Of a DNA stretch of 64,000 nt, positions 1,251 to 21,397 are shown in pieces (the stretch's first letter is position 1; each line of letters begins with the position of its first letter). The notes beneath the pieces are model-generated. The model searched no databases. It was not told the DNA's origin and saw only the letters and a list, made by a program, of their open reading frames with translations. The DNA lies in IMG/VR virus record IMGVR_UViG_3300026521_000471, positions 62,001-126,000 of that record; one strand, 5' to 3'. A program made the position numbers and the translations under genes.

Positions 1251-1427
1251 ATGGACAGAACTAAATATACTGAAGAAATATTTAATGAGATAAAAAAATT
1301 ATCTGAAAGAGATTTACGAGTCGGACAAACCTTTGAAATTATAAGAGGACAGGCTGGAGATTTATTTTCTATGGAAAATTATAAATTGCTTGAACTCTTA
1401 AAAAATCTAAATGCATCCTTTAAATGA
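1251..1427 (+). CDS. Small hypothetical protein (58 aa, MDRTKYTEEIF...)
   Basis: Not in ORF track; AAGGAG RBS and TAAG-N11-TATAAT promoter upstream; stop overlaps the next ATG. Confidence 0.65.
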   Translation: MDRTKYTEEIFNEIKKLSERDLRVGQTFEIIRGQAGDLFSMENYKLLELLKNLNASFK

Positions 1428-2032
1428 TGAAATTAACACTTTCAGAACTTATTAATTTAATTGATGAAAATAACAGTCCATTTTATATTCTTGTAGCCGG
1501 TTCAGTAGGTAGTGGAAAATCTTATTTAGTTAATCAATATTTATCTCATTTAAAATTAATTGATCCGGATATGTTTACAATGCAATTGGGGGATGGGATA
1601 TATGATAGTAAAAATGTTGCTAAATCTATGAGTTTAGTTAAGAAAACAGTAAAAACATATTTAGATGATAAAATATCATTTATTCAACAAGGAACTTCAG
1701 CTAACTTACAATCAACAATTAATAAATTAATATTAGCAAAAGAAAAAGGGTATAATACTGTATTATTTTACGTCGATACCATTCCTGATAAAGCAGAAGA
1801 ATATATTAAAATGAGAGTATCAAATAATGGTCATGGTTCAACAATTACTAAAGATAAAATAAATCGTACTTATGAAGGATCGAATTTTACTTATCGATTT
1901 TTAACTTCTGAAGTTAAAAATGTCTTTTCAATAGAAGAAAAAGAAAGAATTGATGAAATATTGAATAAATTTAAGTTATCCAGAGATAAATTGAGAAGTA
2001 ATTTAGATTATTTTATTAGAATTGAAAATTGA
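1424..2032 (+). CDS. P-loop kinase, zeta-toxin/AAA_33-like
   Basis: Walker A VAGSVGSGKS followed by IDPD, typical of zeta-toxin-like kinases. Confidence 0.7.
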   Translation: MMKLTLSELINLIDENNSPFYILVAGSVGSGKSYLVNQYLSHLKLIDPDMFTMQLGDGIYDSKNVAKSMSLVKKTVKTYLDDKISFIQQGTSANLQSTINKLILAKEKGYNTVLFYVDTIPDKAEEYIKMRVSNNGHGSTITKDKINRTYEGSNFTYRFLTSEVKNVFSIEEKERIDEILNKFKLSRDKLRSNLDYFIRIEN

Positions 2033-3829: not shown

Positions 3830-5131
3830 ATGGGTGGAAACGCAAGATTTATAGATAGACAAACGGGTAAAGATAAAGGGTTTGCTGAAAAAATTGATTT
3901 AAATAAAATCCCTAGAGATACTATAATCAATGAAGTAACAACTTGTTTATTGTCTATTAATAAAAAAATTAATGAGAAAAAAGGTAATTATTTGTGGCCT
4001 GATATTGAAATCATTAAACAAGGCTATATATTTAATGGTTCCAGTTTTTCATTATTTGATAGAACTATATCAGATGAGGATTTTATTAAATTTAAACCCT
4101 TAGTCGGTGACATTGATGTTACATTTCCAAAAGAATATATGAAAGATTTATGGGATGTTTTAAATGACTTGGAAAATGTTGAACTTTCTAAAAATATTAC
4201 ATATATGGGACATAAAAATTCTACAATTGAACCAAGTAAAGCTGGTAATCTTAATCAAATAAATGCTGTATTTCGATTTGATAATGATGATATATCTACA
4301 TATATACAAATAGACTTTGAAGCCTCTGAATATCATGACAATATGCCAACTGAATGGACAATGTTTTCACATAATTCAGATTGGGAAGATATAAAAAATG
4401 GATTTAAAGGTGTGATGCATAAATTCACTTTAATTAATCTTGCTAGAGCATCTTCAAAAATGACTGATATAAAAGTGGTTACACCGACACAAGTCAAGAA
4501 AATAGAAGATGTAACATCTATTGAATATGCAGACTTTCTAAAACAAAGTAAAAAAAATAAGCTTGCAAAAGTTTCTACTAAAAAAGATTTCATAAACCCC
4601 ACAAATTTAGCTTTTTCTGTTGATAAAGGTGTGCGATTGAAATTCCGTCAATTATTCCATAAAGATGGAGTACCAGCAAAAATCGATAATTTATCGGTTT
4701 TTGTTTTTGTAGCGCCAAATGAATCAAAATATGAAACAGATTTAAAAACCATTTTTAGTTTATTTTTTCATACGGAACCAGAAGCCAATGACCTTATTAA
4801 TTTCAGATCATTTGTAGGTGTAGTTGGGTTAATGAAAAAATATCTAAATCAATCAATCATTGAAGATTTTTTTATTAATCATCTTATCAAAAAATCACTA
4901 TTTGGTGAAGGAGCTCAAGGCTTAGAACGTAATAATCCTACTGAGGATAAAAAAATCAAAACAAATATGATTAATAAATTATATTCTGAATTTGATTATT
5001 TAAAAAAGTTCAATAATGAAGTTGAAGATCTTAAAACCAGATATTATGCAGCTTATAAAATGTATGATGAAACCGAAGGTAAATTTATCTCTAAATCTTT
5101 TTCTCAAATATTCGAATCAGTTAATATATAG
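3830..5131 (+). CDS. Pol-beta-superfamily nucleotidyltransferase-like jumbo-phage protein
   Basis: FNGSS...VGDIDV and QIDFE acidic motifs; MGGNA start typical of this phage family. Confidence 0.55.
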   Translation: MGGNARFIDRQTGKDKGFAEKIDLNKIPRDTIINEVTTCLLSINKKINEKKGNYLWPDIEIIKQGYIFNGSSFSLFDRTISDEDFIKFKPLVGDIDVTFPKEYMKDLWDVLNDLENVELSKNITYMGHKNSTIEPSKAGNLNQINAVFRFDNDDISTYIQIDFEASEYHDNMPTEWTMFSHNSDWEDIKNGFKGVMHKFTLINLARASSKMTDIKVVTPTQVKKIEDVTSIEYADFLKQSKKNKLAKVSTKKDFINPTNLAFSVDKGVRLKFRQLFHKDGVPAKIDNLSVFVFVAPNESKYETDLKTIFSLFFHTEPEANDLINFRSFVGVVGLMKKYLNQSIIEDFFINHLIKKSLFGEGAQGLERNNPTEDKKIKTNMINKLYSEFDYLKKFNNEVEDLKTRYYAAYKMYDETEGKFISKSFSQIFESVNI

Positions 5132-5133
5132 GG

Positions 5134-5141
5134 TATAAATA
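5134..5141 (+). promoter_or_regulatory. T4-type late promoter TATAAATA (representative copy)
   Basis: Same octamer just upstream of RBSs at 2043, 3434, 8113, 10479, 15405, 18696, 19708, 22644, 27524, 54022. Confidence 0.7.
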
Positions 5142-5161
5142 AAAGAAAAAGGAGTCTTTTT

Positions 5162-5398
5162 ATGAAAATCAAAGATTTACTAGAAGGTAGTCGTCCAATA
5201 GTTTCAAAAGTGATATGCTCTGATGGAACTGAAAAAGGTTTTGTATGTAATAAAAAAACATATAATTTCCTACATAATATAGAACAGTCAGATAAAAATT
5301 CTATAACAACTTGGGCTAATAAATATTGTAAAGGTACATGGAAAGTAGAAACAACAAATGATTATGTTGGAGAAGAAAGATATGGAGGGAAAGAATAA
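5162..5398 (+). CDS. Hypothetical late protein (MKIKDLLE N-terminus)
   Basis: ORF track; late promoter and AAGGAG RBS. Confidence 0.7.
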   Translation: MKIKDLLEGSRPIVSKVICSDGTEKGFVCNKKTYNFLHNIEQSDKNSITTWANKYCKGTWKVETTNDYVGEERYGGKE

Positions 5399-5727
5399 TG
5401 TTAAGGGAACAAATATTAAAAGATTTTCCTAGTTGGTCTCCAGAAAAACAACTAGCAGAATTCCAAGGTTATAAATCATTAGGTTCTTTTTCACCTTTCA
5501 CAGAAGATGACTATCTAGTTATGGAAGCAGTAATGAATAATCAAAATGTTGCTATTGAATGTGAGAATGGAGTATGTTCTATTAAAGATATAGAAAATGA
5601 AGTAGAAGAATTTGTAGAAATTAACTATAAAGAATTATTAGAATCGATTTTAAAAGAAATTGAAAATAGCAATGATACAAATTTAATAGAAAATATTGAA
5701 AAAATTATAAATGAAAGGTTACATTAA
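5398..5727 (+). CDS. Hypothetical acidic protein
   Basis: ORF track; TAATG coupling to the upstream gene. Confidence 0.65.
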   Translation: MLREQILKDFPSWSPEKQLAEFQGYKSLGSFSPFTEDDYLVMEAVMNNQNVAIECENGVCSIKDIENEVEEFVEINYKELLESILKEIENSNDTNLIENIEKIINERLH

Positions 5728-5745
5728 GTTTTTATTTTGTATAAT
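5724..5745 (+). promoter_or_regulatory. Host-sigma70-type promoter TTAAG-N11-TATAAT (representative copy)
   Basis: Same spacing at about 3781, 6565, 6837, 8058, 15844, 18581, 18944, 34234, 45511, 51358, 54822. Confidence 0.7.
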
Positions 5746-5779
5746 TAAAATGTTAAAAGGTAGTTTTTAATTTAACAAT

Positions 5780-5851
5780 TAACTTGTAGCTATAATGGTA
5801 GAGCGGAGTGTGAAGTTCCTCGCGATATTGGTTCGATTCCAATCAAGTTAA
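5780..5851 (+). pseudogene. Degenerate tRNA-like cloverleaf (anticodon ambiguous, GUG or UGA)
   Basis: Acceptor TAACTTG/CAAGTTA, D arm GCTA..GGTA-GAGC, T arm ATTGG-TTCGATT-CCAAT; irregular anticodon arm, no CCA. Confidence 0.5.
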
Positions 5852-6210
5852 TGGATGATCTCAGGCTATTAATTTATTTTAATAGGAATCGCAAAGAATC
5901 ATCAAATAATTGTTAAATTTAATCTATATATAATAGACAGTAGTTGCAGGAATTGAATTCTCCTAAGACGACTCAATGTGCTAATAATGAAAGGTTAGCA
6001 GTCGCTATATTCTCTGTAAGTGAGATAAGTATGGAAATAAGTTGGTAAAACCAAATGACACCATAAACATTTAAGAAATGTAGTTTGATAATTAGTATGA
6101 AATAACAACCTACGGTTATCAGAGGGTCATCCGACAGATAATTAAGTTTATCTGACCCGTACCTTGGAATAGGTCTAGCGATATTATATATATTTTATAA
6201 ACTATCTTTA

Positions 6211-6375
6211 AATAATTTTACCGAAGCCTCTCGTTAGGTTGGGGTTCGATTCCCTACGAAAAAGTAGCTCTTTTTCATAACTTGGAGGAACCTAAGTGAT
6301 GCCCGAAGTTGAGGTTCGATTCCTCTGTAAGGGTAGCTCCCTTTGTAATACATGGTGGGCTTCGGTAAAATTATT
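6211..6375 (+). ncRNA. Structured RNA: 18-bp terminal stem enclosing two T-loop + GUAGCUC-hairpin units
   Basis: Perfect IR 6211-6228/6358-6375; two units GG-TTCGATT-CC ... stem-GTAGCTC-stem with compensatory stems. Confidence 0.6.
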
Positions 6376-6419
6376 ACAAACAAAAATAAATAAGTATATC
6401 TTATGATCGAGGTGTACTT

Positions 6420-6557
6420 ATGAAACTAGTAATAATTTTTTTACTCCTTTTGCTTTTTACAGGATGTAAAGAACCTACAAAAGAGGAAAAAGCTAAAAAA
6501 CAAGAACAAGCTAAGTTATTATTAATTCTAGATTCAATAGAAAATCAAAAAAATTAA
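6420..6557 (+). CDS. Small lipoprotein (45 aa)
   Basis: Not in ORF track; GAGG RBS; MKLVIIFLLLLLFTG-C lipobox. Confidence 0.65.
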   Translation: MKLVIIFLLLLLFTGCKEPTKEEKAKKQEQAKLLLILDSIENQKN

Positions 6558-6671
6558 TATAATTTTAAGGTTACTTTTTGTATAATATCAATATAAGTTT
6601 TAGTTTCAACTATTTTAAATAGTAGTTAGAAGATTTAGGTTTAAGAAATTAGACCTTCTACTAAGACTTAT

Positions 6672-6818
6672 AAATTAACTTTTTAGTGTTACCAAATAAA
6701 AAAGATATAGCAGCTTAACTGCCTCTACTTTATAAATGTTAGAACACTCCTTTATTTTTTAGAACTCCTTTGTTGGGTTATTTGAGTTACTAATTTGGTA
6801 GCACTAAAAAGTTAATTT
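6672..6818 (+). ncRNA. Long hairpin RNA with two anti-Shine-Dalgarno CUCCUU motifs in the enclosed region
   Basis: 26-bp IR 6672-6697/6793-6818 with one G.U; CTCCTT at 6747 and 6765. Confidence 0.5.
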
Positions 6819-6865
6819 TAAAAAATTAAGTTTATTTTAAGAACTTTTTTTGTATAATTACTTTA

Positions 6866-7790
6866 TCGAAACTGATACCACTAAGAAATCTTTGGATTTT
6901 TTAATGGTGCTAGTCACCCATAGTATGATATGGATAACGGGGATAGTATCCCCCGAAGACGGATTTGACAATTCCGTGCTACTTAATTGTAGTCAATTCA
7001 TACAAGCTGACACTTAGGTAGGTTTGTTGCCTATCGGATACTGAAATGTGTCCTATTAGTGAAGTATTGGAATCTGCAGACTAACAATCTGCGTATGTGA
7101 GAGCCATTCGGTGTAGCATACAGAAGCTAGGGATAGTGAAAGGTTCATCCAACAATACGAATTAAGAATAGTGAACAGTAGAATAGGTGTTTGAGTGTAA
7201 AAACAAAGGCTGCTATTCAATACAATAGTATGAGTCCATAAGGCTTACTGCTAGAAGTATGGTGGAAATCGAAAGATGGAAGCAAAGGGTGTGTTGTATT
7301 CTGAAGGTCATACTTTGGAGCAACTGAGCAGACACACCCTTGTCATTATCGTATAGCTCAGGGTAGAGCGTTTTCATTTTAAGGAAAAGGTCGAAGAGTC
7401 GAATCTTCTACGGAAATATTAAAACGGAAAGTTCTGCTCCCTATGTAAAAGGTCGAAAGACCCGACGAAAATAGCCTAATCGCTGACAGTTTAACTGAAT
7501 TGGCGACAATTAGTACCTCCCAAGGGGAAAGTTGTTTGATAGGATGCAGCATTTATTGGGGTAGCTCCTCATTAACGGCCTGTAAGAAGGACGGAAGAAT
7601 GTTGATAATCGAGTAGTCACATAGTAGAGAGGAAATGCTACCTCTGTAAAAAACAAAGCGGCTATGGGAATCAACTATAATGTACTGGGGACAGTAGTTA
7701 TAGTGGATAAGGAGAGAACCTTTTATGGGGACATAATTGGATAATGCTCTGAATGGATTTCTACTAAAAGGTGTAATCTCAACCTTTTAA
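6866..7790 (+). ncRNA. GOLLD-like giant ornate RNA
   Basis: About 900 nt ORF-free, GC-enriched, hairpin-dense region after promoter 6837-6858; GTGTG..TGTATTCT..AGCAACTGAG..ACAC, CGAGTAGT and 3' GTAATCTCA hairpin resemble GOLLD as I recall it; next to tRNAs, with an embedded tRNA. Ends approximate. Confidence 0.7.
7347..7416 (+). tRNA. Degenerate tRNA-Lys(UUU)-like element embedded in the GOLLD-like RNA
   Basis: TAGCTCAGGGTAGAGC D arm, TTTTC-ATTTTAA-GGAAA anticodon arm, aberrant T loop (GTCGAAT), no CCA. Confidence 0.55.
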
Positions 7791-7937
7791 AATAAAATTT
7801 TAATGAGAAAGAATTATAGATAAAGATTACATCGTAATTTTTGAAACAATTGACAGGAACCCGTTCGATTCGTGGTTTTGGAAGCTGGTGCCACTTTAAG
7901 TCTTTATTGCTTCTATCTTTCTCATTAAAATTTTATT
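7791..7937 (+). ncRNA. Structured RNA closed by a perfect 22-bp stem, apical GTTCGATTC T-loop
   Basis: IR 7791-7812/7916-7937. Confidence 0.5.
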
Positions 7938-8057
7938 TAAATATAGTTTAATACAATTTTTATTAATTGAAAATATCTATTCAATTAAGTTTGAGGTGAA
8001 ATAGAAGATTGAGTGAAAGTCTCATATTTAAATAAAATTTAAATTTTTAAGTGTAAA

Positions 8058-8097
8058 TTAAGAAAAATTATTGTATAATTACAGTAATTAAAAAGAA
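8058..8097 (+). promoter_or_regulatory. Promoter of tRNA array 1
   Basis: TTAAG-N11-TATAAT; 8068-8097 is identical over 30 nt to 18591-18620. Confidence 0.7.
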
Positions 8098-8151
8098 AAA
8101 AATAAAAAGTGATATAAATAAAATCACAAAATAAAAATAAGGAGAACGGTT

Positions 8152-8241
8152 ATGAAAATAGTATCAATATTTAACAATTATTTAAACATATTTTATTCGG
8201 CACTAATATCGTACTCTTCTTATTTTAGAGTCTTTCACTAA
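8152..8241 (+). CDS. Leader peptide A (29 aa, MKIVSIFNNYLNIFYSALISYSSYFRVFH)
   Basis: AAGGAG RBS; Ser x5, Tyr x4, Phe x4, Ile x4 (all ATA), one TTA, matching the downstream tRNAs. Confidence 0.8.
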   Translation: MKIVSIFNNYLNIFYSALISYSSYFRVFH

Positions 8242-8330
8242 GAGATAAATTCATTTTTATCCCTTAGTGAAGAACTTAGGGATAAATTGAAAATCTTTCA
8301 AAAATCCCCTATTTTCTTTACAAATTACTT
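8236..8330 (+). promoter_or_regulatory. Attenuator-like switch A
   Basis: Box 1 CACTAAGAGATAAA (8236-8249) and arm 3 (8275-8286) both pair with arm 2 TTTATCCCTTAGTG (8256-8269); C-rich, G-poor tract follows. Confidence 0.7.
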
Positions 8331-8331
8331 T

Positions 8332-8422
8332 GGAGAGTTGGCAGAGTTGGTCGATTGCACCGGTCTTGAAAACCGGCGACGTGTAACAGCGTCCGAGAGT
8401 TCGAATCTCTCACTCTCCACCA
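8332..8422 (+). tRNA. tRNA-Ser(UGA)
   Basis: Type II cloverleaf, CCGGT-CTTGAAA-ACCGG, encoded CCA. Confidence 0.95.
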
Positions 8423-8426
8423 TTTT

Positions 8427-8511
8427 GGAAGCGTAGTCAAGTGGTCAACGACGGCAGACTGTAAATCTGCTCCCTATGGGTTCGGTGGTTCAAATCCACC
8501 CGCTTCCACCA
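8427..8511 (+). tRNA. tRNA-Tyr(GUA)
   Basis: GCAGA-CTGTAAA-TCTGC, V arm, CCA. Confidence 0.95.
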
Positions 8512-8570
8512 TAGAAAAAAATAAAAAATTAAGTTAATCTAAAGGATTAATTTGGTATAATAACTTTATA

Positions 8571-8743
8571 AATTGATTGAAATATGAAAACTTGAAAACG
8601 GATTAAACTGTGGTGGTTTATGATGTGGCGAAGTTGTAAACAAAAGAGCCCGGACCATTAGTAAAAGACTAACCATCTTTGAAAGTGGTACGGAAGCTGT
8701 TTGGATGAAGACGGGTACTAAAGTTTTCATTTTTCAGTCAATT
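8571..8743 (+). ncRNA. Structured RNA domain closed by a ~23-bp stem, abutting the permuted tRNA
   Basis: IR 8571-8593/8721-8743 with G.U on the + strand; GC-enriched multibranch interior. Confidence 0.5.
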
Positions 8744-8776
8744 GATTGAGAATTAAACTAAGAAAATACATCGAAG

Positions 8777-8869
8777 TAAAACCGCTGACATATTGTCTTG
8801 TTGGTTCGAGTCCAACCTTCCCCACCAGTTTATATGGGTGAAGTGGTGAAATTGGTAAACACGGCGGAT
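8777..8869 (+). tRNA. Circularly permuted tRNA, best reconstructed as Leu(UAA): 3' half 8777-8827, spacer, 5' half 8836-8869
   Basis: 3' half has V arm, T arm and CTTCCCC-A-CCA; the downstream 5' half GGG(T)GAAG-TG-GTG-AAATTGGTAAA-CAC-GGCGGAT complements both acceptor and anticodon stems; flanks 8744-8772 and 8867-8901 pair. Confidence 0.65.
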
Positions 8870-8920
8870 GATAAAATATTTCTTAGGATTCAATCTCAAT
8901 CAGGTCTGAAATAAAAAAGC

Positions 8921-8997
8921 GGACAATTAACTCAGTTGGTTAGAGTCACCGCCTCATAAGCGGGAGGTCGCTGGTTCGAGTCCAGCATTGTCCACCA
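8921..8997 (+). tRNA. tRNA(CAU), probably Ile2 (lysidine type, reads AUA)
   Basis: CTCATAA loop, GTCGCTGGTTCGAGTCCAGCA Ile2-like T arm, CCA; leader A uses ATA four times. Confidence 0.85.
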
Positions 8998-9673
8998 TCA
9001 ATACAAAAGTATCATTCAAAATCATTTTAATTTCACGCTCCTTTAAAACTATTAAATTATTAACAACGTCCCATTTTGCTTTATCTCTTTCTCGTTCATA
9101 TCCTTTAACTTCAATAAATATATTTAAATCGGGAATATAAAAATCTGGAAAATATAAGTGTTTTCTTCCTTTCCATTCATATTCAAATGGTTCTGTATCT
9201 CTAATATAGTTAATATCATGTTCCACTAAATATTTTGCTACTATCACTTCCCATGTTCCATGAAATTTATCTCCATTAAATTCAATTATTTTTACTCTAC
9301 CACAAACGTTATTAGCAGAATAACTATCTGGATTATTACGAACCATATCTCTCATTCGTTCTGATTGTTCAATTTTATACTTAGTACTTTTCATATATGC
9401 TTGAAAATTATCTGACATAAAGCCTTGAGGTTCCCAACCATTAATTTCCATATTATGATGTTTGGTCCAATAATGATTTCTAAATTGACCAATAGTTTTA
9501 AAATGTTTATCGCATTTATTACAAATATACTGATTATTATCTATATTAAGAAATTTATCTGACAACATATCTCTTTGATTTTTTTCACAAGCTTTTGTAC
9601 CTATATGACTTTTTAATTTAGTTAAAGAACTAAACTCTTTTCCACAATCAGAACATATTTTTGAGTCATTCAT
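8954..9673 (-). mobile_element. Free-standing homing endonuclease-like gene (C2H2 zinc fingers + PD-(D/E)XK domain)
   Basis: CSDC..H, CNKC..H..H fingers; YFPDFYIPDLNIFIEVKG nuclease motif; antisense insertion in the tRNA cluster. Confidence 0.7.
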
Positions 9674-9702
9674 TAGTCTTCCCTTTTTTGTATAATTTAA
9701 TT

Positions 9703-9768
9703 AGAAGGACAGCAACTCATACTTCCCGAGTTGTTTCTTAATTGGTGCAAACAATTAAGATTACTTCT
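9703..9768 (+). ncRNA. Conserved three-way-junction RNA antisense to an endonuclease 5' UTR (copy 1)
   Basis: AGAAG-GACAG-[stem]-TT-TCTTAA[stem]TTAAGA-TTA-CTTCT, repeated with covariation at 28593-28655; TGTATAAT just upstream. Confidence 0.6.
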
Positions 9769-10265
9769 TTATTACTCTTATTTATACTTATTTTTAATCA
9801 ATTTTAGAAACTTTCTAATATTTTCAAAGGAATTTAAGTTTATTTTAATATATATTATTGTATAATATTATAAATAAAAAGGTTATTAAAAATTATATTA
9901 GCCCACCATTAAAATAATTGATTGCTTAAAGATTTCTTTGAAATTTTTCAGCAGTTAATAGAAATATTAACTTTAGCAAATGAGCCCAAGTATCACCCGA
10001 AGCTATTAAGTAGGGATTGCCTCTCCATTGGAAGATGGCTTGGGAGCCGATTTAAACCGAAGTACAACTCTGTACAAGGACAGTTTTAAAACTGGTGGTT
10101 ATGTGCTTTATTCCTAAAAGCAATGAGTAAAAATTAAGCGTGAAAAATAAAACTCAAAAATAAGGACAGAAAGATGAATTTTACATTTAGTAAGTCCTAC
10201 TATAAATCAGTCTAATTCAATAGGGTTTGTAGTAGGACGTTAATATAATAACAGAAAACTACAAA

Positions 10266-13025: not shown

Positions 13026-15212
13026 ATGAAATGGAATATTAATAAAAAATTAAAAGCCATGACAATCATTCCGAGTATAATAATGATATTTGGATTTGGT
13101 TATCTGGTTTATACCGATTATAATGAATATCGAGATTTAGTTGTTTTAGAAAAAACAGTTAAAATCGATACACATATTAATCATTTAGTGCATTTCTTGC
13201 AACAAGAAAGAGGAGCTAGTGCTGGATACGTAGCATCCAATGGTAAAAAATTTAAAAATCAACTATCTGAAATTCGTAAAAAAACTGATACAAAATTCAC
13301 TATCTTAGAGAAAGCATTAAAAGGTAACAGAAATCATTTTACATTAGAAATGTCTAGAAAAATAGATGAGGCACTTCAAATGTATAACGAACTTTCCGTT
13401 ATGCGAAGTAGTATTGATAATTTAACAATAACCGTTCCAGAAACTGTTAAATACTTTAGTTCCATGAATGCAACCTTTTTAGATTTTATTAAACTAAGTA
13501 AAGATTTATCTAATGATAATGAATTTTCAAAACAACTTTCAGTAATTACAGCTATTAGTGCTACAAAAGAATTAGCAGGTAAAGAAAGAGCTGTTATGAC
13601 AAGTGTTTTTGCTAAAGATAAATTTATAGATGGTTTCTATGCACAATTTAAAACTTTAGTAGCATTACAGAAAAGTTATATGGAAAGTTTTAGATTACTT
13701 GCAACTCCAACAGCAATTAAAATTCTTAATGAAATATCTTCTACTTCTCCTTTTTTAGACGTTGAAGAAATGCGAAAGATTGCAATGGAACGAAATAAAG
13801 ATGGGGCTTTTGGTGTTGACTCGGTAAGATGGTTTGATACTATGACTAAAAAAATAAATGGTATGGAACAAATCGAACATAAATTAGAAAATATTCTTCT
13901 AGATGAAATTGATAGTCAAATGAAATATTTATTGTCGATGGTTATTACAATGTTTATCCTTGCAGTCTTAATTACATCTAGTTTAACTTATGCAGGGTAT
14001 AAATTTAATAAATTTTTAATCGATAGAGTGAACAAGATGAATATTATTTTAGAAGATTCTATTAATACTCATAGCTATGATGAACAATTATTAATTTCTA
14101 ATGATGATGAATTATCAAAGATAGAAAATGCAATTAATAAAATGTTTGTGAGTTTAACTGAAGCTGCAGAGGCTAGAAGAATTTCGGATATTGAAATAAA
14201 GAAAAAAGCTGAAGAAACTGCAAAACTATTAGCAAGAAATAATATGAATCTTAAACTGAATAAACTAATGAGTACGCATACAACCGATAACCTAAATGAT
14301 ATTAAAGATGGGCTGAGTGATGGGACTGAAGAATTAGAAAAAATTAATGAAATTAATGATAAAGCCCAAGATAATTTTAATTCTGTTATTGCGGCTAAAA
14401 ATACTATGGTTACTACTTTAGAAACCGTTTCTGAAGGAATGAATTCTACAACAGAAAGAGCGGAACAATTAGAAGAATCTGTTAATGAAATTGCAAGCAT
14501 TATTGGTTTAATCAAAGATATTTCTGAACAAACAAACTTACTTGCACTTAATGCAGCTATTGAAGCAGCAAGAGCGGGTGAGCATGGACGAGGTTTTGCC
14601 GTGGTTGCTGATGAAGTTCGTAAACTAGCTGAGAGAACAGCTGTTGCAACTAAGAATGTAGAAGCGAGTATTAATATCGTTAAACAAAATACTTCTGAAA
14701 TGAATGAAAGTACTGAACAAATGACAGAAAGTATTAAAGATGCTCAAGAGGTATCTCATACTCTAGATGTAGAATTAGACACCTTAATATCTATCAATAG
14801 AAATAATACTGTTAGAAATAATATGATTAGTGAAGATATTCTTGTTACCCTTACTAAATTAGAACATGTTATTTTTAAAATAATGGGTTATAATAGCGTT
14901 TTAGAAGAATGTACAAAATGTGAACCTGTCACTCATGAAGCTTGTAGATTTGGACAATGGTATAAAACTGAGGGAAAAAATAGATATAGTAAAAATTCAT
15001 CTTTTAGAAGTATCGAAATACCGCATAAAGAAGTCCACGAAAATGTTAGAAAAGCCGTTGAATTAATAGGCAAAAAAGATGATGATACTATTATTCGATA
15101 CTTTGAGATCGTAGAAGTAAATTCTAAAAAATTATTTGATCTTTTGACAAGAATAGTTAAAGAAGAAAATGATAAAATGGTTCTGGAGATTAATGATGGA
15201 AAAAATAAATAA
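13026..15212 (+). CDS. Methyl-accepting chemotaxis protein with NIT sensor and C-terminal CZB domain
   Basis: [17 protein letters not shown] (NIT)-TM-HAMP; [35 protein letters not shown] signalling tip; [16 protein letters not shown]. Confidence 0.9.
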
Positions 15213-17135: not shown

Positions 17136-17882
17136 ATGTCATATGATTGGTCTAAATACTCTGCATCATCCGATTCTAAAACTCTTAATAGTACAAATCA
17201 ACCAACACTTAAAGAACTTCGAGAAGCATTAATACGACCTTTAGGCGAAAGTATTAATGAAGCAATTGAAGAACATGTATCTACTGCAATGGCAAAAATC
17301 ATTACAGGTAATAATAACGCTGACTCAGCTTTAAGTAACTCTTTGAATAATCAATTAAAAGTTAATGAATCATCATTAGAAAATATATTAAAAAATAATG
17401 AAATATCATTAGAAGCACGAATTAAAAAAACCACAGAAATTATTACTGGTATATTAGTAGGAATATATGATGAAGATATAATAGAAGATACCTTAAAATC
17501 TATCGATATTAATAACTTAACATCAATTAATGATAATTGGGATGGTTTAGAAAAGGGTGCGTCATTTATGAAAAATGACATAAAAAGAAATTCTAATTTT
17601 ACCATGGATAATGGGACGGAACATAATCCAGTAGATCCATTGATTGAATTAACAAGAGCCGTAAAAAGTCTAGTTGTGCAACATACTTGGATGTCAGTAA
17701 AATCTGATAAACAGGCTAGCAATATGGGTGTTGCTGTAGATGGTGTTGTTTCTGAAGCCTTTTACAATGATGCAAAAGCCGCAAATAGAAAAGTAGCAGA
17801 AGATACAGTTCATCAGATTTTAAATTTAGATGGTACACATGATGATGACGGAATTTATCCAAATAATCAGGGATTTGAATAA
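17136..17882 (+). CDS. Hypothetical protein
   Basis: ORF track; AAGGA RBS; coupled to the PAAR gene. Confidence 0.75.
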   Translation: MSYDWSKYSASSDSKTLNSTNQPTLKELREALIRPLGESINEAIEEHVSTAMAKIITGNNNADSALSNSLNNQLKVNESSLENILKNNEISLEARIKKTTEIITGILVGIYDEDIIEDTLKSIDINNLTSINDNWDGLEKGASFMKNDIKRNSNFTMDNGTEHNPVDPLIELTRAVKSLVVQHTWMSVKSDKQASNMGVAVDGVVSEAFYNDAKAANRKVAEDTVHQILNLDGTHDDDGIYPNNQGFE

Positions 17883-18178
17883 TGGGTACTTTAGCGGGTA
17901 GAGTCCCAGATTTAAATACAGGTCACCCACCTTGTTTTACACCTACCGTAGCTATTACAGGTTCTCCAACAGTATTTGCAAATTCATTACCAGCTCATAG
18001 AATGGTTGATTTACATATCCCACATCCTTGTCCTGGAATACCACCACATCCAGTATTTCAAGCGATAGGATGTTCGAGAGTATATGTAAATTCATTAATG
18101 TGGGCTGGAGTTGGACATCCTCAATTATGTCTATCTTTATTATTAACCGGTTCACCGACAGTATTTGTATGTATTTAA
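17882..18178 (+). CDS. PAAR-repeat tail-spike tip protein (T4 gp5.4-like)
   Basis: GH..C.PT..ITGSPTVFANSLPAHRM.D...PH.C and terminal TGSPTVF repeat. Confidence 0.85.
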   Translation: MGTLAGRVPDLNTGHPPCFTPTVAITGSPTVFANSLPAHRMVDLHIPHPCPGIPPHPVFQAIGCSRVYVNSLMWAGVGHPQLCLSLLLTGSPTVFVCI

Positions 18179-19225: not shown

Positions 19226-19302
19226 GTATCCGTAACTCAACTGGATAGAGTATTCGGCTTTTAACCGAAAGGTTGTGAGTTCAAGTCTCACCGGATACAC
19301 CA
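19226..19302 (+). tRNA. tRNA-Lys(UUU) copy 1
   Basis: TTCGG-CTTTTAA-CCGAA, CCA; D loop carries A20. Confidence 0.9.
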
Positions 19303-19304
19303 TT

Positions 19305-19380
19305 GGGTGTATAGCTCAGTTGGTAGAGCACATCACTTTTAATGATGGGGTCTAGGGTTCAAATCCCTATGCACCCACCA
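19305..19380 (+). tRNA. tRNA-Lys(UUU) copy 2
   Basis: CATCA-CTTTTAA-TGATG, CCA. Confidence 0.93.
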
Positions 19381-20693: not shown

Positions 20694-20767
20694 TGAGGTA
20701 TCGTCTAGTGGTAGGACATCTGGTTTTGGTCCAGAGAGCGGGGGTTCGAACCCCTCTACCTCGTCCA
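20694..20767 (+). tRNA. tRNA-Gln(UUG) copy 1
   Basis: TCTGG-TTTTGGT-CCAGA, CCA. Confidence 0.93.
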
Positions 20768-20780
20768 TTGTGTATTTTGC

Positions 20781-20851
20781 TGGGCTATCGTCTAGTGGCA
20801 GGACTCCGTCTTTTGGCGGCGGTAACATAGGTTCGAATCCTATTAGCCCAT
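20781..20851 (+). tRNA. tRNA-Gln(UUG) copy 2
   Basis: CCGTC-TTTTGGC-GGCGG; no encoded CCA. Confidence 0.9.
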
Positions 20852-20895
20852 CAAAGTACATTGTACTTTTATCAATGAAGATATAAAAATAAAAC

Positions 20896-20970
20896 GGCTC
20901 CATGGAGAAGTGGTTATCTCATCGCTCTTTCACAGCGAAATCTCGGGTTCAAATCCCGATGGAGTCACCA
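20896..20970 (+). tRNA. tRNA-Glu(UUC) copy 1
   Basis: TCGCT-CTTTCAC-AGCGA, CCA. Confidence 0.95.
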
Positions 20971-20979
20971 AATTTAATT

Positions 20980-21062
20980 GCCGAAATGGTGGAATTGGTA
21001 GACACGCTAGACTTAGGATCTAGTGCTTTTGCGTGAGAGTTCGAGTCTCTCTTTCGGCACCA
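20980..21062 (+). tRNA. tRNA-Leu(UAG)
   Basis: CTAGA-CTTAGGA-TCTAG, V arm, CCA. Confidence 0.95.
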
Positions 21063-21132
21063 TTATATCAATTTATTGATGAAGCCTTAATTTAAATATT
21101 AAAGTTTCACAAATAAATTGTTACGAGCTTTA

Positions 21133-21232
21133 GAATCGCACATAGGATACGCGGCCTATGTAGCAGAAGTACCCACTTTAAGGAGGGAGATAGATTTCAA
21201 GGGATTGAAATTGAATATCCAGAATGCGATTC
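21133..21232 (+). ncRNA. Unidentified multibranch RNA inside tRNA array 2
   Basis: Closing stem GAATCGCA/TGCGATTC with three internal hairpins. Confidence 0.45.
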
Positions 21233-21242
21233 ATTAAAAAAT

Positions 21243-21319
21243 GTCGATGTATATCAACTGGTTAGATTGCCACCCTGTCAAGGTGGAGGTTGTGGGTTCG
21301 AGTCCCATCATTGACGCCA
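21243..21319 (+). tRNA. tRNA-Asp(GUC) copy 2
   Basis: CCACC-CTGTCAA-GGTGG, G73, CCA. Confidence 0.92.
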
Positions 21320-21322
21320 AAT

Positions 21323-21397
21323 GCTTCGTTCGACTATCGGCTAGGTCATTAGGTTTTCATCCTAAAAAGAGGGGTTCGATTCCCCTACGAAGTACCA
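21323..21397 (+). tRNA. tRNA-Glu(UUC) copy 2
   Basis: TTAGG-TTTTCAT-CCTAA, CCA. Confidence 0.92.

What the first reader, a model, noticed from the sequence alone, without database searches (positions are those of the whole stretch)
6866..7790. GOLLD-like giant RNA carrying an embedded, degenerate tRNA-Lys(UUU)
About 900 nt of promoter-driven, ORF-free, densely structured sequence with segments resembling GOLLD RNA. Established: GOLLD RNAs are phage-associated, tRNA-linked, sometimes contain a tRNA in the variable region, form multimeric cages by cryo-EM, and have unknown function. The passenger here (7347-7416) has a UUU anticodon but a broken T loop and no CCA, so it is more likely displayed than used. 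Inference: a cage presenting a Lys anticodon arm could decoy Lys-specific anticodon nucleases such as PrrC or PARIS AriB.
Basis: partly seen in the sequence, partly recalled or inferred. Interest (0 to 1): 0.62.

Follow-up and report, generated by a model that had tools for sequence, protein, structure and literature searches.

The report
Phage GOLLD RNA with tRNA-like insert
This is a divergent but genuine GOLLD RNA, a giant cage-forming phage RNA of unknown function, found in RNA libraries from hydrothermal vents; its internal linker carries a Lys-anticodon tRNA look-alike that is not an ordinary tRNA gene.

Summary
Window 7284-7785 matches the whole Rfam GOLLD model (110.7 bits, E 8e-30), though below the curated cut-off of 150. 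The 5' part (about 6866/6913-7283) is homologous to the 5' domains of GOLLDs that pass the cut-off. The record is a 224-kb, 27.9% GC virus contig from a vent metagenome. Contigs identical to 6917-7772 occur in four vent or biofilm RNA libraries, with almost nothing on the flanks.

The insert at 7347-7416 sits between P13 and P15. Published cryo-EM places that linker inside the cage, so "displayed" is doubtful. Embedded tRNAs and pseudo-tRNAs in GOLLD are already published.

In about 30 related GOLLDs the insert keeps its D, anticodon and T stems with compensatory changes. None has CCA, whereas 184 of 215 free tRNAs beside them do. Pair 2:71 is unpaired in 20 of 22. The anticodon loop is a hot spot of change: Lys mostly, but also Leu-, Arg-, Asp-, Asn- and Phe-like.

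The window's copy also has a 6-nt T loop and A53-U61. One RNA contig bridges the whole insert, so an uncut form exists.

The Lys-nuclease decoy idea is untested. The phage's Pnkp/Hen1 RNA-repair genes make it plausible, not shown. Verdict: new member of a known kind.

The parts
6850..6858 (+). Promoter-like extended -10 motif TTGTATAAT. It predicts a transcription start near 6866.
   Evidence: The motif occurs 21 times in the window against 3.75 expected (0 of 100 shuffles reach 21). Twenty of the 21 copies are on the + strand, and the copies whose surroundings I looked at (5737, 6578, 6850, 8071) lie between genes, ahead of RNA genes. A 39-nt direct repeat links this promoter region to the one at 6548-6586.
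6866..7283 (+). GOLLD 5' domain, the variable half. The first about 45 nt (6871-6914) form an extra hairpin that relatives lack, so the 5' end is uncertain between 6866 and about 6913.
   Evidence: nhmmer matches the 5' domains of GOLLDs that pass the Rfam cut-off: L037 E 7e-5, L021 1e-4, L042 9e-4. In a 16-sequence alignment, 113 consensus pairs are predicted and 64 show compensatory changes. The window forms 85 of 139 consensus pairs, 30 of them changed on both sides; the middle part (7010-7170) fits poorly.
7284..7341 (+). P13/P14 hairpin (Rfam model positions 1-62). It is the last helix before the linker. Its apical loop is UCAUA-like and lacks the conserved run of A.
   Evidence: cmscan alignment; alignment columns 505-561 of A1.
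7347..7416 (+). tRNA-like element in the P13/P15 linker. Cloverleaf with anticodon UUU (7378-7380), a 6-nt T loop (7398-7403), A53-U61, an A2.A71 mismatch, discriminator A, and no CCA.
   Evidence: RF00005 at 43.8 bits. ARAGORN does not call it. On its own it folds as a cloverleaf with a 4-bp acceptor stem. Closest to the embedded elements of L042 and L075, at 70-71% identity.
7417..7440 (+). Conserved 3' end of the linker (AAACGGAAAG followed by a CUGCUCC-like motif). It corresponds to the AAAGCGAAAG motif of relatives.
   Evidence: Alignment A4, columns 25-50; Rfam consensus.
7441..7466 (+). 5' strand of the P15 pseudoknot (7441-7446 plus 7464-7466). It is interrupted by a window-specific 17-nt GNRA hairpin (7447-7463).
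   Evidence: All 10 aligned GOLLDs lack these 17 nt (columns 51-67). The split strand is exactly complementary to 7616-7624 (read). cmscan misaligned this spot, which costs score.
7616..7624 (+). 3' strand of the P15 pseudoknot (GUCACAUAG), just after the conserved GAGUAG.
   Evidence: It makes 9 Watson-Crick pairs with 7441-7446 and 7464-7466. The helix covaries in L008, L007 and L011.
7441..7787 (+). Conserved GOLLD 3' domain (P15-P27). It ends in the P27 hairpin 7767-7787 with loop GUAAUCUCA.
   Evidence: RF02032 alignment through model position 416. The window forms 60 of 83 consensus pairs, 20 changed on both sides, against 68-71 of 83 for four outgroup GOLLDs that pass the cut-off. nhmmer: L039 E 9e-16, L008 E 1.5e-15.
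6917..7772 (+). Stretch covered by contigs from RNA libraries. This is the minimum extent of the RNA seen in vent and biofilm metatranscriptomes.
   Evidence: In four runs from four studies, contigs with 0 differences lie on 6917-7202, 6970-7219, 7190-7481 and 7452-7772. No contig lies on 7839-8172, and only sparse ones lie on 6176-6836.
7787..7941 (.). Long hairpin directly after the GOLLD 3' end, with 26-nt arms 96% complementary and a 103-nt spacer. Possibly a transcription stop or barrier. Its membership in the unit is uncertain.
   Evidence: Inverted repeat I2. Folds at -42.4 kcal/mol, and no other copy exists in the genome. No RNA contigs lie beyond about 7838.

Best explanation
Window about 6866-7787 (+) is the gene of a GOLLD RNA. 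It belongs to a divergent branch of the GOLLD subgroup that carries a tRNA-shaped module in the linker between its two domains.

Shown here:
- It is homologous over both domains to GOLLDs that pass the Rfam cut-off.
- It has a phage-type promoter motif of its own.
- It lies among the tRNA genes of a 224-kb, AT-rich virus record from a hydrothermal vent.
- Contigs from RNA libraries of vent communities lie on it and hardly at all on its flanks.
- The tRNA-like module is still joined to both flanking domains in at least one RNA-library contig.

Inferred from published cryo-EM of other GOLLDs: the RNA assembles into a closed homomultimer of 12-14 copies, and the linker, and hence one tRNA-like module per copy, lies in the lumen.

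Inferred from comparison: the module is not a decoding tRNA. It has no CCA in genomes whose free tRNAs encode CCA. Its acceptor end is systematically frayed. Its anticodon loop changes quickly and sometimes illegally. A proper free tRNA with the same anticodon exists wherever the array is well sampled.

Most likely mechanism (inference): the module is a tethered tRNA mimic kept for its shape. It would give the cage interior a multivalent binding site for something that recognises tRNA. The partner is unknown. A host tRNA-cleaving defence nuclease is one candidate among several; others are RNase P, modification enzymes and the ribosome. In this particular phage the module has decayed further (T loop), so its interaction may be weakened.
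For: Identity:
- RF02032 matches full length at E 8e-30.
- nhmmer links both halves to loci that score 170-207 bits with RF02032.
- Consensus helices are kept with many double changes.
- The P15 pseudoknot is intact around a 17-nt insertion.
- Folding z-score is -6.0.

Context: 22 tRNAs plus a tmRNA in the genome, and a recurring promoter motif.

Expression: identical contigs in 4 RNA runs from 4 studies cover 6917-7772. Contig 7190-7481 bridges the whole insert.

The module is not an ordinary tRNA:
- 0 of 23 embedded elements end in CCA, against 184 of 215 free tRNAs in the same loci and 19 of 22 in the window.
- The cloverleaf D, anticodon and T stems are 97-100% paired with compensatory changes.
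- Pair 2:71 is unpaired in 20 of 22 and pair 1:72 in 9 of 22.
- The same anticodon occurs as a proper free tRNA in the two loci with 23 free tRNAs (L026, L078), in five less fully sampled ones (L045, L050, L011, L051, L032) and in the window.
- The Leu(UAG)-like inserts have a short variable arm, unlike the free tRNA-Leu beside them.
- Anticodon loops with C33 or A33, C37, or 8 nt occur.
- The anticodon loop is enriched in differences between close pairs. In L042 vs L075, 3 of 12 differences fall in the loop, p 9e-5. In L043 vs L051, 5 of 7 loop positions differ, p 8e-4.

Lumen location of the linker, and tRNAs in it: 10.1101/2024.12.08.627333 and PMC12990946.

No separate product from a mycobacterial embedded pseudo-tRNA: PMC6582537.
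Against: - The Rfam score is below the curated cut-off (110.7 against 150).
- The P14 apical loop lacks the conserved run of A that makes an intermolecular A-minor contact in the solved cage. The middle of the 5' domain fits the relatives' consensus poorly. Multimer formation by this RNA is therefore unproven.
- The RNA evidence comes from assembled contigs. It shows that an uncut form exists, but cannot show ends, strand or level, and cannot exclude that part of the pool is cut.
- The window's T loop (6 nt, G54, A53-U61) may prevent the tRNA elbow from forming. That would weaken any shape-based role and favours the relic reading.
- Fast change in the anticodon loop fits relaxed constraint as well as selection.
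Confidence: 0.55

Rival explanations
1. One reading: the Lys(UUU) anticodon arm is a decoy or sponge for Lys-specific anticodon nucleases (PrrC-like, PARIS AriB-like, or HEPN nucleases that prefer U). It would spare the phage's and host's real tRNA-Lys.
For: - The anticodon stem-loop is the best-preserved tRNA feature of the window's insert. A strain variant seen in RNA run X7 keeps UUU, and its G>A change at 7384 improves the anticodon stem.
- Lys (CUU or UUU) is the commonest embedded identity in the subgroup, in about 18 of 25 loci.
- Embedded anticodon loops copy those of free tRNAs of the same phage. The Lys loop CUCUUAA is identical, and the L032 Asp stem-loop is identical except for position 33.
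- The phage encodes Hen1 and Pnkp, an Rnl2-like ligase, and two tandem tRNA-Lys(UUU) genes. From general knowledge of Pnkp/Hen1 and T4 Pnk/Rnl1, these are hallmarks of a conflict over tRNA cleavage.
Against: - No nuclease, cleavage product or competition has been seen.
- The linker is inside the cage according to cryo-EM of other GOLLDs, so access is restricted.
- The predominance of Lys may be inherited, because the loci are related.
- Other clades carry Asn, Phe, Asp, Arg and Leu-like loops, some with C33, A33 or C37.
- RNA ligase co-occurs in only 4 of 39 GOLLD virus records.
- PrrC-type enzymes depend on modified wobble bases (general knowledge). Whether an embedded mimic gets modified is unknown.
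- No paper in the library links GOLLD to anticodon nucleases.
Confidence: 0.13
2. Stored cargo: the insert is a real tRNA-Lys precursor kept inactive inside the cage. RNase P and RNase Z would release it, and CCA would be added, when the cage opens. This is the "inhibited storage" idea of PMC12990946 and the "covalently linked tRNAs exposed when open" idea of Kretsch et al.
For: - The element passes the Rfam tRNA cut-off.
- In relatives the D loop, T loop and three stems are canonical and under purifying selection.
- Several embedded elements score 55-70 bits.
- The idea is published.
Against: - No CCA in any of 23 embedded elements, although neighbouring free tRNAs encode it.
- The 2:71 mismatch is conserved.
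- The discriminator base varies (A, C or U) among Lys-type inserts.
- A free tRNA with the same anticodon makes the insert redundant.
- The window copy has a defective T loop.
- An RNA contig bridges both junctions.
- No product was detected in Mycobacterium aubagnense (PMC6582537).
Confidence: 0.08
3. Relic or spacer: the ancestor of this GOLLD subgroup captured a tRNA. In this phage the copy is decaying and now serves only as tolerated filler in a linker that needs no particular sequence.
For: - It has the lowest tRNA score in the window. The T loop is shortened, G53-C61 is lost and the D loop is short.
- Some GOLLDs that pass the cut-off have no tRNA in the linker, for example L008. ARAGORN called none at the linker position in about 26 of the 39 pattern hits; most of those 26 were not themselves confirmed as GOLLD by Rfam.
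- The solved env-38 cage has a disordered linker.
- A hypervariable anticodon loop fits absence of constraint.
Against: - All four helices of the window copy still pair. The T stem change is compensated (A53-U61), and the inner acceptor stem differs from relatives by paired changes (CGUA/UACG against CAAA/UUUG).
- A strain variant improves a pair.
- The module is kept across at least 25 distinct GOLLDs, with 81 cells changed on both sides against 21 in shuffles.
Confidence: 0.22
4. Chance resemblance: an AT-rich intergenic region that merely resembles GOLLD and holds a tRNA pseudogene.
For: The score is below the Rfam gathering cut-off. The genome search with RF02032 found nothing in the record.
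Against: - E 8e-30 over the full model.
- Independent nhmmer links to GOLLDs that pass the cut-off.
- Compensatory pair changes.
- Coverage by RNA-library contigs confined to the element.
- One search is uninformative, because its control rang in no genome.
Confidence: 0.01

Closest known systems
GOLLD RNA (Rfam RF02032; env-38 14-mer and Streptococcus agalactiae 12-mer cryo-EM cages)
   Same: - The 3' domain matches the model end to end, including the GACGAAA...CUAAU, GAGUAG and GUGGAUAAG motifs and the terminal GUAAUCUCA loop.
- The P15 pseudoknot is present.
- It has a variable 5' domain.
- It is phage-borne, lies beside tRNA genes, and is about 0.9 kb long.
   Different: - It scores 110.7 bits, below the cut-off of 150.
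- A 17-nt GNRA hairpin is inserted in the P15 5' strand.
- The P14 loop lacks the run of A.
- There is a possible extra 5' hairpin.
- The host phage is a 27.9% GC vent virus, not a lake or Lactobacillales source.
- Assembly into a cage is not tested.
GOLLDs with an embedded tRNA or pseudo-tRNA in the J13/15 linker (Mycolicibacterium tRNA-Phe, PMC12990946; M. aubagnense pseudo-tRNA, PMC6582537)
   Same: - The insert is in the same position, between P13 and P15.
- It is judged a pseudo-tRNA.
- No evidence of a separate product: Northern blot there, bridging RNA contig here.
   Different: - The anticodon here is Lys UUU, not Phe.
- The T loop here is shortened.
- The comparison made here (no CCA, conserved 2:71 mismatch, fast-changing anticodon loop, redundancy with a free tRNA) was not in any of the papers I read.
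ROOL RNA (the other phage-borne cage-forming RNA)
   Same: Phage-encoded, near tRNA arrays, forms a cage with a disordered internal linker (literature).
   Different: No sequence or structure match to the Rfam ROOL model at E up to 10. It is a different family.
tRNA-like modules embedded in long RNAs (MALAT1 mascRNA; plant-virus 3' tRNA-like structures)
   Same: A tRNA-shaped fold inside a much longer non-coding or viral RNA, used for recognition by tRNA enzymes rather than for decoding (general knowledge).
   Different: Those are terminal, and are cleaved by RNase P (mascRNA) or aminoacylated (plant viral tRNA-like structures). This one is internal, has no CCA, and is seen uncut.
Phage counter-measures to anticodon nucleases (T4 Pnk plus Rnl1 against PrrC; T5 tRNA-Lys against PARIS; bacterial Pnkp/Hen1 repair)
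   Same: The same phage genome carries Pnkp, Hen1, an RNA ligase and duplicated tRNA-Lys(UUU) genes.
   Different: Those act by repairing or replacing tRNA. A decoy role for a GOLLD insert is hypothetical and has no precedent in the papers searched.

Membership tests
GOLLD RNA (RF02032) | Covariance-model score at or above Rfam's gathering cut-off (150 bits) | tested here: not met
   110.7 bits, though full length (1-416) with E 8.1e-30. Relatives score 170-207 bits. Part of the shortfall comes from the 17-nt insertion in P15, which cmscan misaligned, and from the changed P14 loop. I file it as a divergent homologue on the rows below, not on this threshold.
GOLLD RNA (RF02032) | Conserved 3' domain helices with compatible base pairs | tested here: met
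   60 of 83 consensus pairs are canonical, 20 of them changed on both sides. This is just below the range of four outgroup GOLLDs that pass the cut-off (68-71 of 83), in a sequence-only alignment.
GOLLD RNA (RF02032) | P15 pseudoknot between the linker's 3' end and the strand after GAGUAG | tested here: met
   7441-7446 plus 7464-7466 pair perfectly with 7616-7624. The helix covaries in L007, L008 and L011.
GOLLD RNA (RF02032) | Conserved terminal and internal motifs (GUGGAUAAG; AAAGG-GUAAUCUCA-CC hairpin; GAGUAG; GACGAAA...CUAAU) | tested here: met
   All are present at 7464-7480, 7611-7616, 7703-7711 and 7767-7787.
GOLLD RNA (RF02032) | A second, less conserved 5' domain upstream of P13 | tested here: met
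   nhmmer E 7e-5 to 9e-4 to the 5' domains of GOLLDs that pass the cut-off. 85 of 139 consensus pairs are formed, 30 changed on both sides. The central part is divergent.
GOLLD RNA (RF02032) | Phage or prophage location next to tRNA genes | tested here: met
   Virus record of 224 kb. tRNA or tRNA-like genes lie at 5779-5852 and 8332-8511, with larger arrays downstream.
GOLLD RNA (RF02032) | Transcribed as a stable RNA | tested here: met
   Identical contigs in four metatranscriptome runs cover 6917-7772 and almost nothing on the flanks. This is contig-level evidence only; strand and ends are not shown.
GOLLD RNA (RF02032) | Self-assembly into a closed 12- to 14-mer cage | not testable with these tools
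   Known for env-38 and S. agalactiae GOLLD. Here the P14 loop lacks the run of A used in one inter-chain contact, so assembly cannot be assumed.
tRNA (functional, decoding) | Cloverleaf recognised by tRNA models | tested here: inconclusive
   RF00005 at 43.8 bits, above the cut-off of 29, but ARAGORN makes no call. Alone it folds as a cloverleaf with only a 4-bp acceptor stem, z -0.9.
tRNA (functional, decoding) | Canonical T arm (G53-C61, 7-nt loop beginning U54-U55-C56) | tested here: not met
   A53-U61 and the 6-nt loop GUCGAA. All 22 relatives have G53-C61, and 21 have a 7-nt loop.
tRNA (functional, decoding) | Intact 7-bp acceptor stem and a 3' CCA, encoded like that of its neighbours | tested here: not met
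   A2.A71 mismatch and no CCA, whereas 19 of 22 free tRNAs in the window encode CCA. In relatives, 0 of 23 embedded against 184 of 215 free tRNAs have CCA, and 2:71 is unpaired in 20 of 22.
tRNA (functional, decoding) | Released from its precursor | tested here: inconclusive
   RNA contig 7190-7481 bridges both junctions in three runs with 0 differences. Contigs cannot exclude a processed fraction.
ROOL RNA | Match to the Rfam ROOL model | tested here: not met
   No ROOL hit in 6500-8200 at E up to 10 or in the window at gathering stringency.
Anticodon-nuclease decoy (functional class, not a sequence family) | Bound or cut by an anticodon nuclease, and protects real tRNA | not testable with these tools
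   Only context is available: Pnkp, Hen1 and an RNA ligase in the same genome. No general co-occurrence: 4 of 39 records.

The most novel reading that the evidence does not exclude
GOLLD cages act as anti-defence organelles. The tRNA-shaped modules tethered in the lumen, whose anticodon loops turn over fast and copy those of the phage's own tRNAs, would trap or saturate host tRNA-cleaving nucleases. The window's Lys(UUU) version would be one state of an arms race, in a phage that also repairs cut tRNAs with Pnkp/Hen1.
Probability: 0.12. Interest if true: 0.85.

Novelty: new member of a known kind. Interest (0 to 1): 0.4.

Why it matters
GOLLD is among the largest structured bacterial or phage RNAs. 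It was recently shown to form RNA-only cages, yet its function is unknown.

This case adds four things:
- A divergent member that standard Rfam annotation would miss, from a new habitat (a hydrothermal vent jumbo-size phage).
- Evidence from several independent metatranscriptomes that the RNA is present in natural communities.
- A comparative description of the linker tRNA. It is a conserved tRNA-shaped module without CCA, with a frayed acceptor end, a fast-changing anticodon loop and a proper free twin. This argues that it is kept for its shape, not for decoding.
- A genomic setting (Pnkp/Hen1, RNA ligase, duplicated tRNA-Lys) that makes the "tRNA warfare" hypothesis for GOLLD concrete enough to test in a tractable GOLLD phage.

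None of this settles the function.

Tried and rejected
- The genome search with RF02032 on the window's own record found nothing. Its control rang in no genome, so the blank is uninformative. cmscan on the region finds the match.
- blastn of 6800-7950 against GenBank phages found no match.
- The first 18-nt pattern from the 3' hairpin gave 3 viral hits with no Rfam family. These were chance hits.
- The one metagenome scan returned only the source contig (Ga0256828_1000004, the same length as the record), so no near relatives were obtained.
- The motif scan GGTAGGTTCGCAAAT gave 50 hits, of which about half were coding-sequence chance hits. Only the 23 that also carry the AAAGCGAAAG motif were used.
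- ROOL gave no hit.
- RNA-repair co-occurrence as a general GOLLD trait: the PF09414 ligase occurs in 4 of 39 GOLLD virus records, and in 2 of the 7 that are at least 90% complete. That is not an association I can claim, and I had no GOLLD-free control set.
- RtcB is absent from the genome. T4 Rnl1 (PF09511) was not found, but that control also rang nowhere.
- In context, RNAfold pairs the D-arm 3' strand with the downstream GUUCUGCUCC motif instead of forming the cloverleaf. By inspection, relatives' sequences are not complementary there, so I did not adopt this fold.
- I considered that the acceptor 5' strand pairs alternatively with the conserved AAAGCGAAAG motif (UUCG/CGAA in the subgroup; the ACGGAA motif is duplicated in the window). 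It was not conserved outside the subgroup, so I dropped it.
- The two 26-nt-arm hairpins flanking GOLLD are not copies of one mobile element. They share no similarity and have no other copies in the genome.
- A joint from 7219 to 7426 in run X5 has only 25 letters on its shorter side. The tool warns that such joints usually come from other organisms, so I did not interpret it.
- The host was not determined.
Full report
**What is at the coordinates**

A scan of 6500-8200 with all Rfam models gives GOLLD (RF02032) at 7284-7785 on the + strand. The match covers the whole model (1-416), scores 110.7 bits and has E 8.1e-30. The curated cut-off is 150 bits, so a standard gathering scan of the window lists only tRNAs. 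No ROOL match appears at E up to 10.

Inside the GOLLD match, RF00005 (tRNA) matches 7347-7416 at 43.8 bits. That is the weakest of the window's 23 tRNA hits. ARAGORN does not call it.

- The anticodon loop is AUUUUAA, with UUU at 7378-7380.
- The T stem is GAAGA/UCUUC, so the universal G53-C61 pair is A-U.
- The T loop is GUCGAA, 6 nt.
- Pair 2:71 is an A.A mismatch.
- There is no CCA, although 19 of the 22 ARAGORN-called tRNAs of the window encode theirs.

The stretch has no ORF over 57 aa. It folds far better than shuffles, z = -6.0.

TTGTATAAT at 6850-6858 is one of 21 copies of a motif expected 3.75 times. Twenty of the copies are on the + strand. I read it as this phage's extended -10 promoter. 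The generic sigma-70 scan did not list the site.

**Is it really a GOLLD?**

The window is part of a 224,467-base virus record with 27.9% GC. No GenBank phage resembles the region by blastn.

I collected GOLLDs from IMG/VR with a two-block pattern from the conserved 3' end. Of 13 loci scanned, 11 score 170-207 bits with RF02032.
- nhmmer links the window's 3' half to L039 and L008 (E about 1e-15). It links the 5' half to L037, L021 and L042 (E 7e-5 to 9e-4).
- In a 3' domain alignment the window forms 60 of 83 consensus pairs, 20 of them changed on both sides. Four outgroup GOLLDs that pass the cut-off form 68-71 of 83.
- In the 5' domain it forms 85 of 139 pairs, 30 changed on both sides. Both ends fit well and the centre is divergent. 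That matches the published picture of a variable 5' domain.

The pseudoknot P15 looked broken in the cmscan alignment but is intact. 7441-7446 and 7464-7466 are exactly complementary to 7616-7624. They are separated by a 17-nt GGUC-GAAA-GACC hairpin that none of ten other GOLLDs has.

That insertion, and a P14 loop without the usual run of A, explain part of the low score. I file the element as a divergent homologue of GOLLD, while noting that it fails Rfam's bit threshold.

**Expression**

The stretch occurs in public runs from hydrothermal-vent, epibiont and biofilm samples, including metatranscriptomes.

I laid four RNA runs from four studies on 5000-10000.
- Contigs with no differences lie on 6917-7202, 6970-7219, 7190-7481 and 7452-7772.
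- The flanks (6176-6836 and 7839-8172) have none, or only sparse low-depth pieces.

These are assembled contigs. They show presence, not ends, strand or level. The contrast with the laid flanks makes carry-over DNA an unlikely source.

Contig 7190-7481 spans the whole tRNA-like insert and both junctions in three runs, so an uncut form exists. A strain variant in run X7 differs at three positions of the insert: 7370, 7382 and 7384. It keeps UUU and turns the U30.G40 pair into U-A.

**Where the insert sits, and what is already known**

The insert lies between the 3' strand of P13 (which ends at 7341) and P15 (which starts at 7441).

Kretsch et al. (bioRxiv 10.1101/2024.12.08.627333) report three things. 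GOLLD env-38 is a closed 14-mer. The variable linker is unresolved, but its flanks point into the interior. Phage tRNAs are sometimes present in that linker.

A 2026 review (PMC12990946) describes a Mycolicibacterium GOLLD with tRNA-Phe in J13/15 "pointing inward" and proposes "inhibited storage".

PMC6582537 found a pseudo-tRNA inside the M. aubagnense GOLLD and could not detect its expression as a separate RNA.

So the embedded tRNA is a known feature, and "displayed on a cage" should read "enclosed in a cage".

**What comparison adds**

A motif from the 5' flank of the embedded element retrieved 23 more GOLLD loci, 18 of them unique. Bacterial genomes gave six further cases.

On 22 embedded elements the cloverleaf is strongly supported. 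91% of cells are paired, against 71% in shuffles and 29-42% with slid partners. 81 cells are changed on both sides, against 21 in shuffles. The D, anticodon and T stems are 97-100% paired.

The acceptor end is systematically open. Pair 2:71 is unpaired in 20 of 22 and pair 1:72 in 9 of 22. The window shares the 2:71 mismatch.

None of 23 embedded elements ends in CCA, whereas 184 of 215 free tRNAs in the same loci do.

A proper free tRNA with the same anticodon is present in the two loci with 23 free tRNAs (L026, L078), in five less fully sampled ones (L045, L050, L011, L051, L032) and in the window, which has two tandem tRNA-Lys(UUU) genes at 19226-19380.

The embedded identity is mostly Lys(CUU), in about 16 loci, plus Lys(UUU) in L042 and the window. 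On nearly identical bodies the loop also reads as follows:
- Leu-like UAG, three times on different bodies, always with a short variable arm unlike the free tRNA-Leu next to it.
- Arg UCU (twice) and Arg CCU.
- Asp GUC with C33, and Asn GUU with A33.
- Lys UUU with C37, Phe GAA and His-like AUG.
- An 8-nt loop, three times.

Between close pairs, differences pile up in the anticodon loop. L042 and L075 are 98.7% identical, and 3 of their 12 differences fall in the loop (p 9e-5). In L043 vs L051, 5 of 7 loop positions differ against 13% elsewhere (p 8e-4).

The comparison positions include constrained ones. This shows a hot spot, not necessarily positive selection.

The window's element is closest to those of L042 and L075 (70-71% identity), against 64% to its own free tRNA-Lys genes. 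Together with its position, this suggests inheritance within GOLLD rather than recent capture.

**How it most likely works**

Shown: it is a GOLLD homologue, it is present in RNA libraries from natural communities, and it carries a non-canonical tRNA-shaped module that remains in the transcript.

Inferred from the literature: it forms a multimeric cage with the module in the lumen.

Inferred from comparison: the module is maintained for its fold, not for decoding.

My best reading is a tethered tRNA mimic that offers a tRNA-shaped ligand inside the cage. The partner is unknown.

In the window's lineage the T loop has decayed, as it also has in L007, so the elbow may be impaired. That keeps the relic reading alive at about 0.2.

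The cargo reading is weakened by the missing CCA, the open acceptor end, the variable discriminator, the redundancy and the bridging contig.

**The decoy idea**

Context is suggestive. The same genome encodes the following:
- Hen1 (Hen1_N, E 1.5e-64).
- An 896-aa Pnkp with kinase, phosphoesterase and ligase domains.
- A 220-aa Rnl2-type RNA ligase.
- 22 tRNAs and a tmRNA.

From general knowledge, Pnkp/Hen1 repairs anticodon loops cut by ribotoxins.

Three things count against the decoy idea. Nothing ties GOLLD itself to that conflict. RNA ligase genes occur in only 4 of 39 GOLLD-bearing virus records. No paper in the library joins GOLLD and anticodon nucleases. The enclosed position, the non-Lys inserts in other clades and the loops that break tRNA rules also weigh against it. 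I give it about 0.13.

**Verdict**

This is a new, divergent member of a known kind, with a known type of insert.

The comparative description of the insert and the natural-community RNA evidence are modest additions. The function remains open.

Noticed in passing
G000:C1 about 165,590-171,310 (L123:1590-2843 and L123:4621-7311); L120:1402-2064: Outside the window, the same phage genome encodes a complete bacterial-type RNA repair pair. Hen1 has Hen1_N at E 1.5e-64 plus a methyltransferase domain. Pnkp is 896 aa, with AAA_33 kinase, Metallophos and PNKP_ligase domains. There is also a separate 220-aa Rnl2-type RNA ligase.
   Followed up: partly
window 5775-6175: A second stretch covered by RNA-library contigs lies behind its own TTGTATAAT motif at 5737-5745. 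It holds a weak tRNA-like element at 5780-5851 (37.4 bits; ARAGORN calls Phe GAA; no CCA), followed by about 320 nt with a sub-threshold RAGATH-33 match at 5962-6062 (33 bits, E 1e-4). It may be another tRNA-linked non-coding RNA.
   Followed up: partly
window 6221-6367: A roughly 150-nt element closed by a 10-bp long-range stem (6221-6230 with 6358-6367). It holds two T-arm-like GGTTCGATTCC hairpins, each followed by a GTAGCTC D-arm-like motif. Rfam and ARAGORN do not call it. It may be a permuted or fragmentary tRNA-like structure.
   Followed up: no
window 6672-6818 and 7787-7941: Two unrelated long hairpins bracket the GOLLD gene. Each has 26-nt arms 96% complementary and a spacer of about 100 nt. 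Each is unique in the genome, and RNA contigs barely cover them: one low-depth contig (6617-6786) reaches into the first and none lies on the second. The first lies between a duplicated promoter region (6548-6586) and the GOLLD promoter.
   Followed up: partly
window, 21 sites (e.g. 2503, 5737, 6578, 6850, 8071, 9688, 18594, 18957): TTGTATAAT occurs 21 times against 3.75 expected, and 20 copies are on the + strand. It is probably the phage's extended -10 promoter consensus, and it marks transcription units that include tRNA clusters.
   Followed up: partly
window 19226-19380 and 20694-21397: Free tRNA genes come in duplicates for Lys(UUU) (tandem), Gln(UUG), Glu(UUC) and Asp(GUC). The first three are the wobble-uridine tRNAs that several anticodon nucleases prefer (general knowledge). 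AT-rich codon usage could explain the duplicates equally well.
   Followed up: no
window 13026-15212 (+): The virus record encodes a 728-aa chemoreceptor, with a NIT nitrate/nitrite-sensing domain (E 2e-52), an MCP signalling domain and a CZB zinc-binding domain. This is an unusual auxiliary gene for a phage.
   Followed up: no
window 1424-2032 (+) and 17882-18178 (+): A Zeta-toxin/AAA_33-type kinase (202 aa) lies 5 kb upstream of GOLLD. A small protein with a near-threshold PAAR-motif match (26.9 bits against a cut-off of 27; 98 aa) lies further downstream.
   Followed up: no
window 7380-7395 and 7442-7457: A 16-nt direct repeat (14 of 16 identical) links the variable-loop/T-stem part of the tRNA-like element to the window-specific hairpin inserted in P15. 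The insertion might derive from a partial duplication of the insert.
   Followed up: no
L007:5303-5373, L075:418-489, L110 (embedded element about 322 nt before the GOLLD 3' end): Three embedded tRNA-like elements have 8-nt anticodon loops. L007 also shares the window's 6-nt T loop starting with G and its short D loop.
   Followed up: partly
G000:C1:181437-181818 (-); also L032:2635-2985 and L035:11219-11698: The phage encodes a tmRNA. Two other GOLLD-bearing virus contigs carry tmRNA genes within a few kb of their GOLLD, one of them of the permuted alphaproteobacterial type.
   Followed up: no
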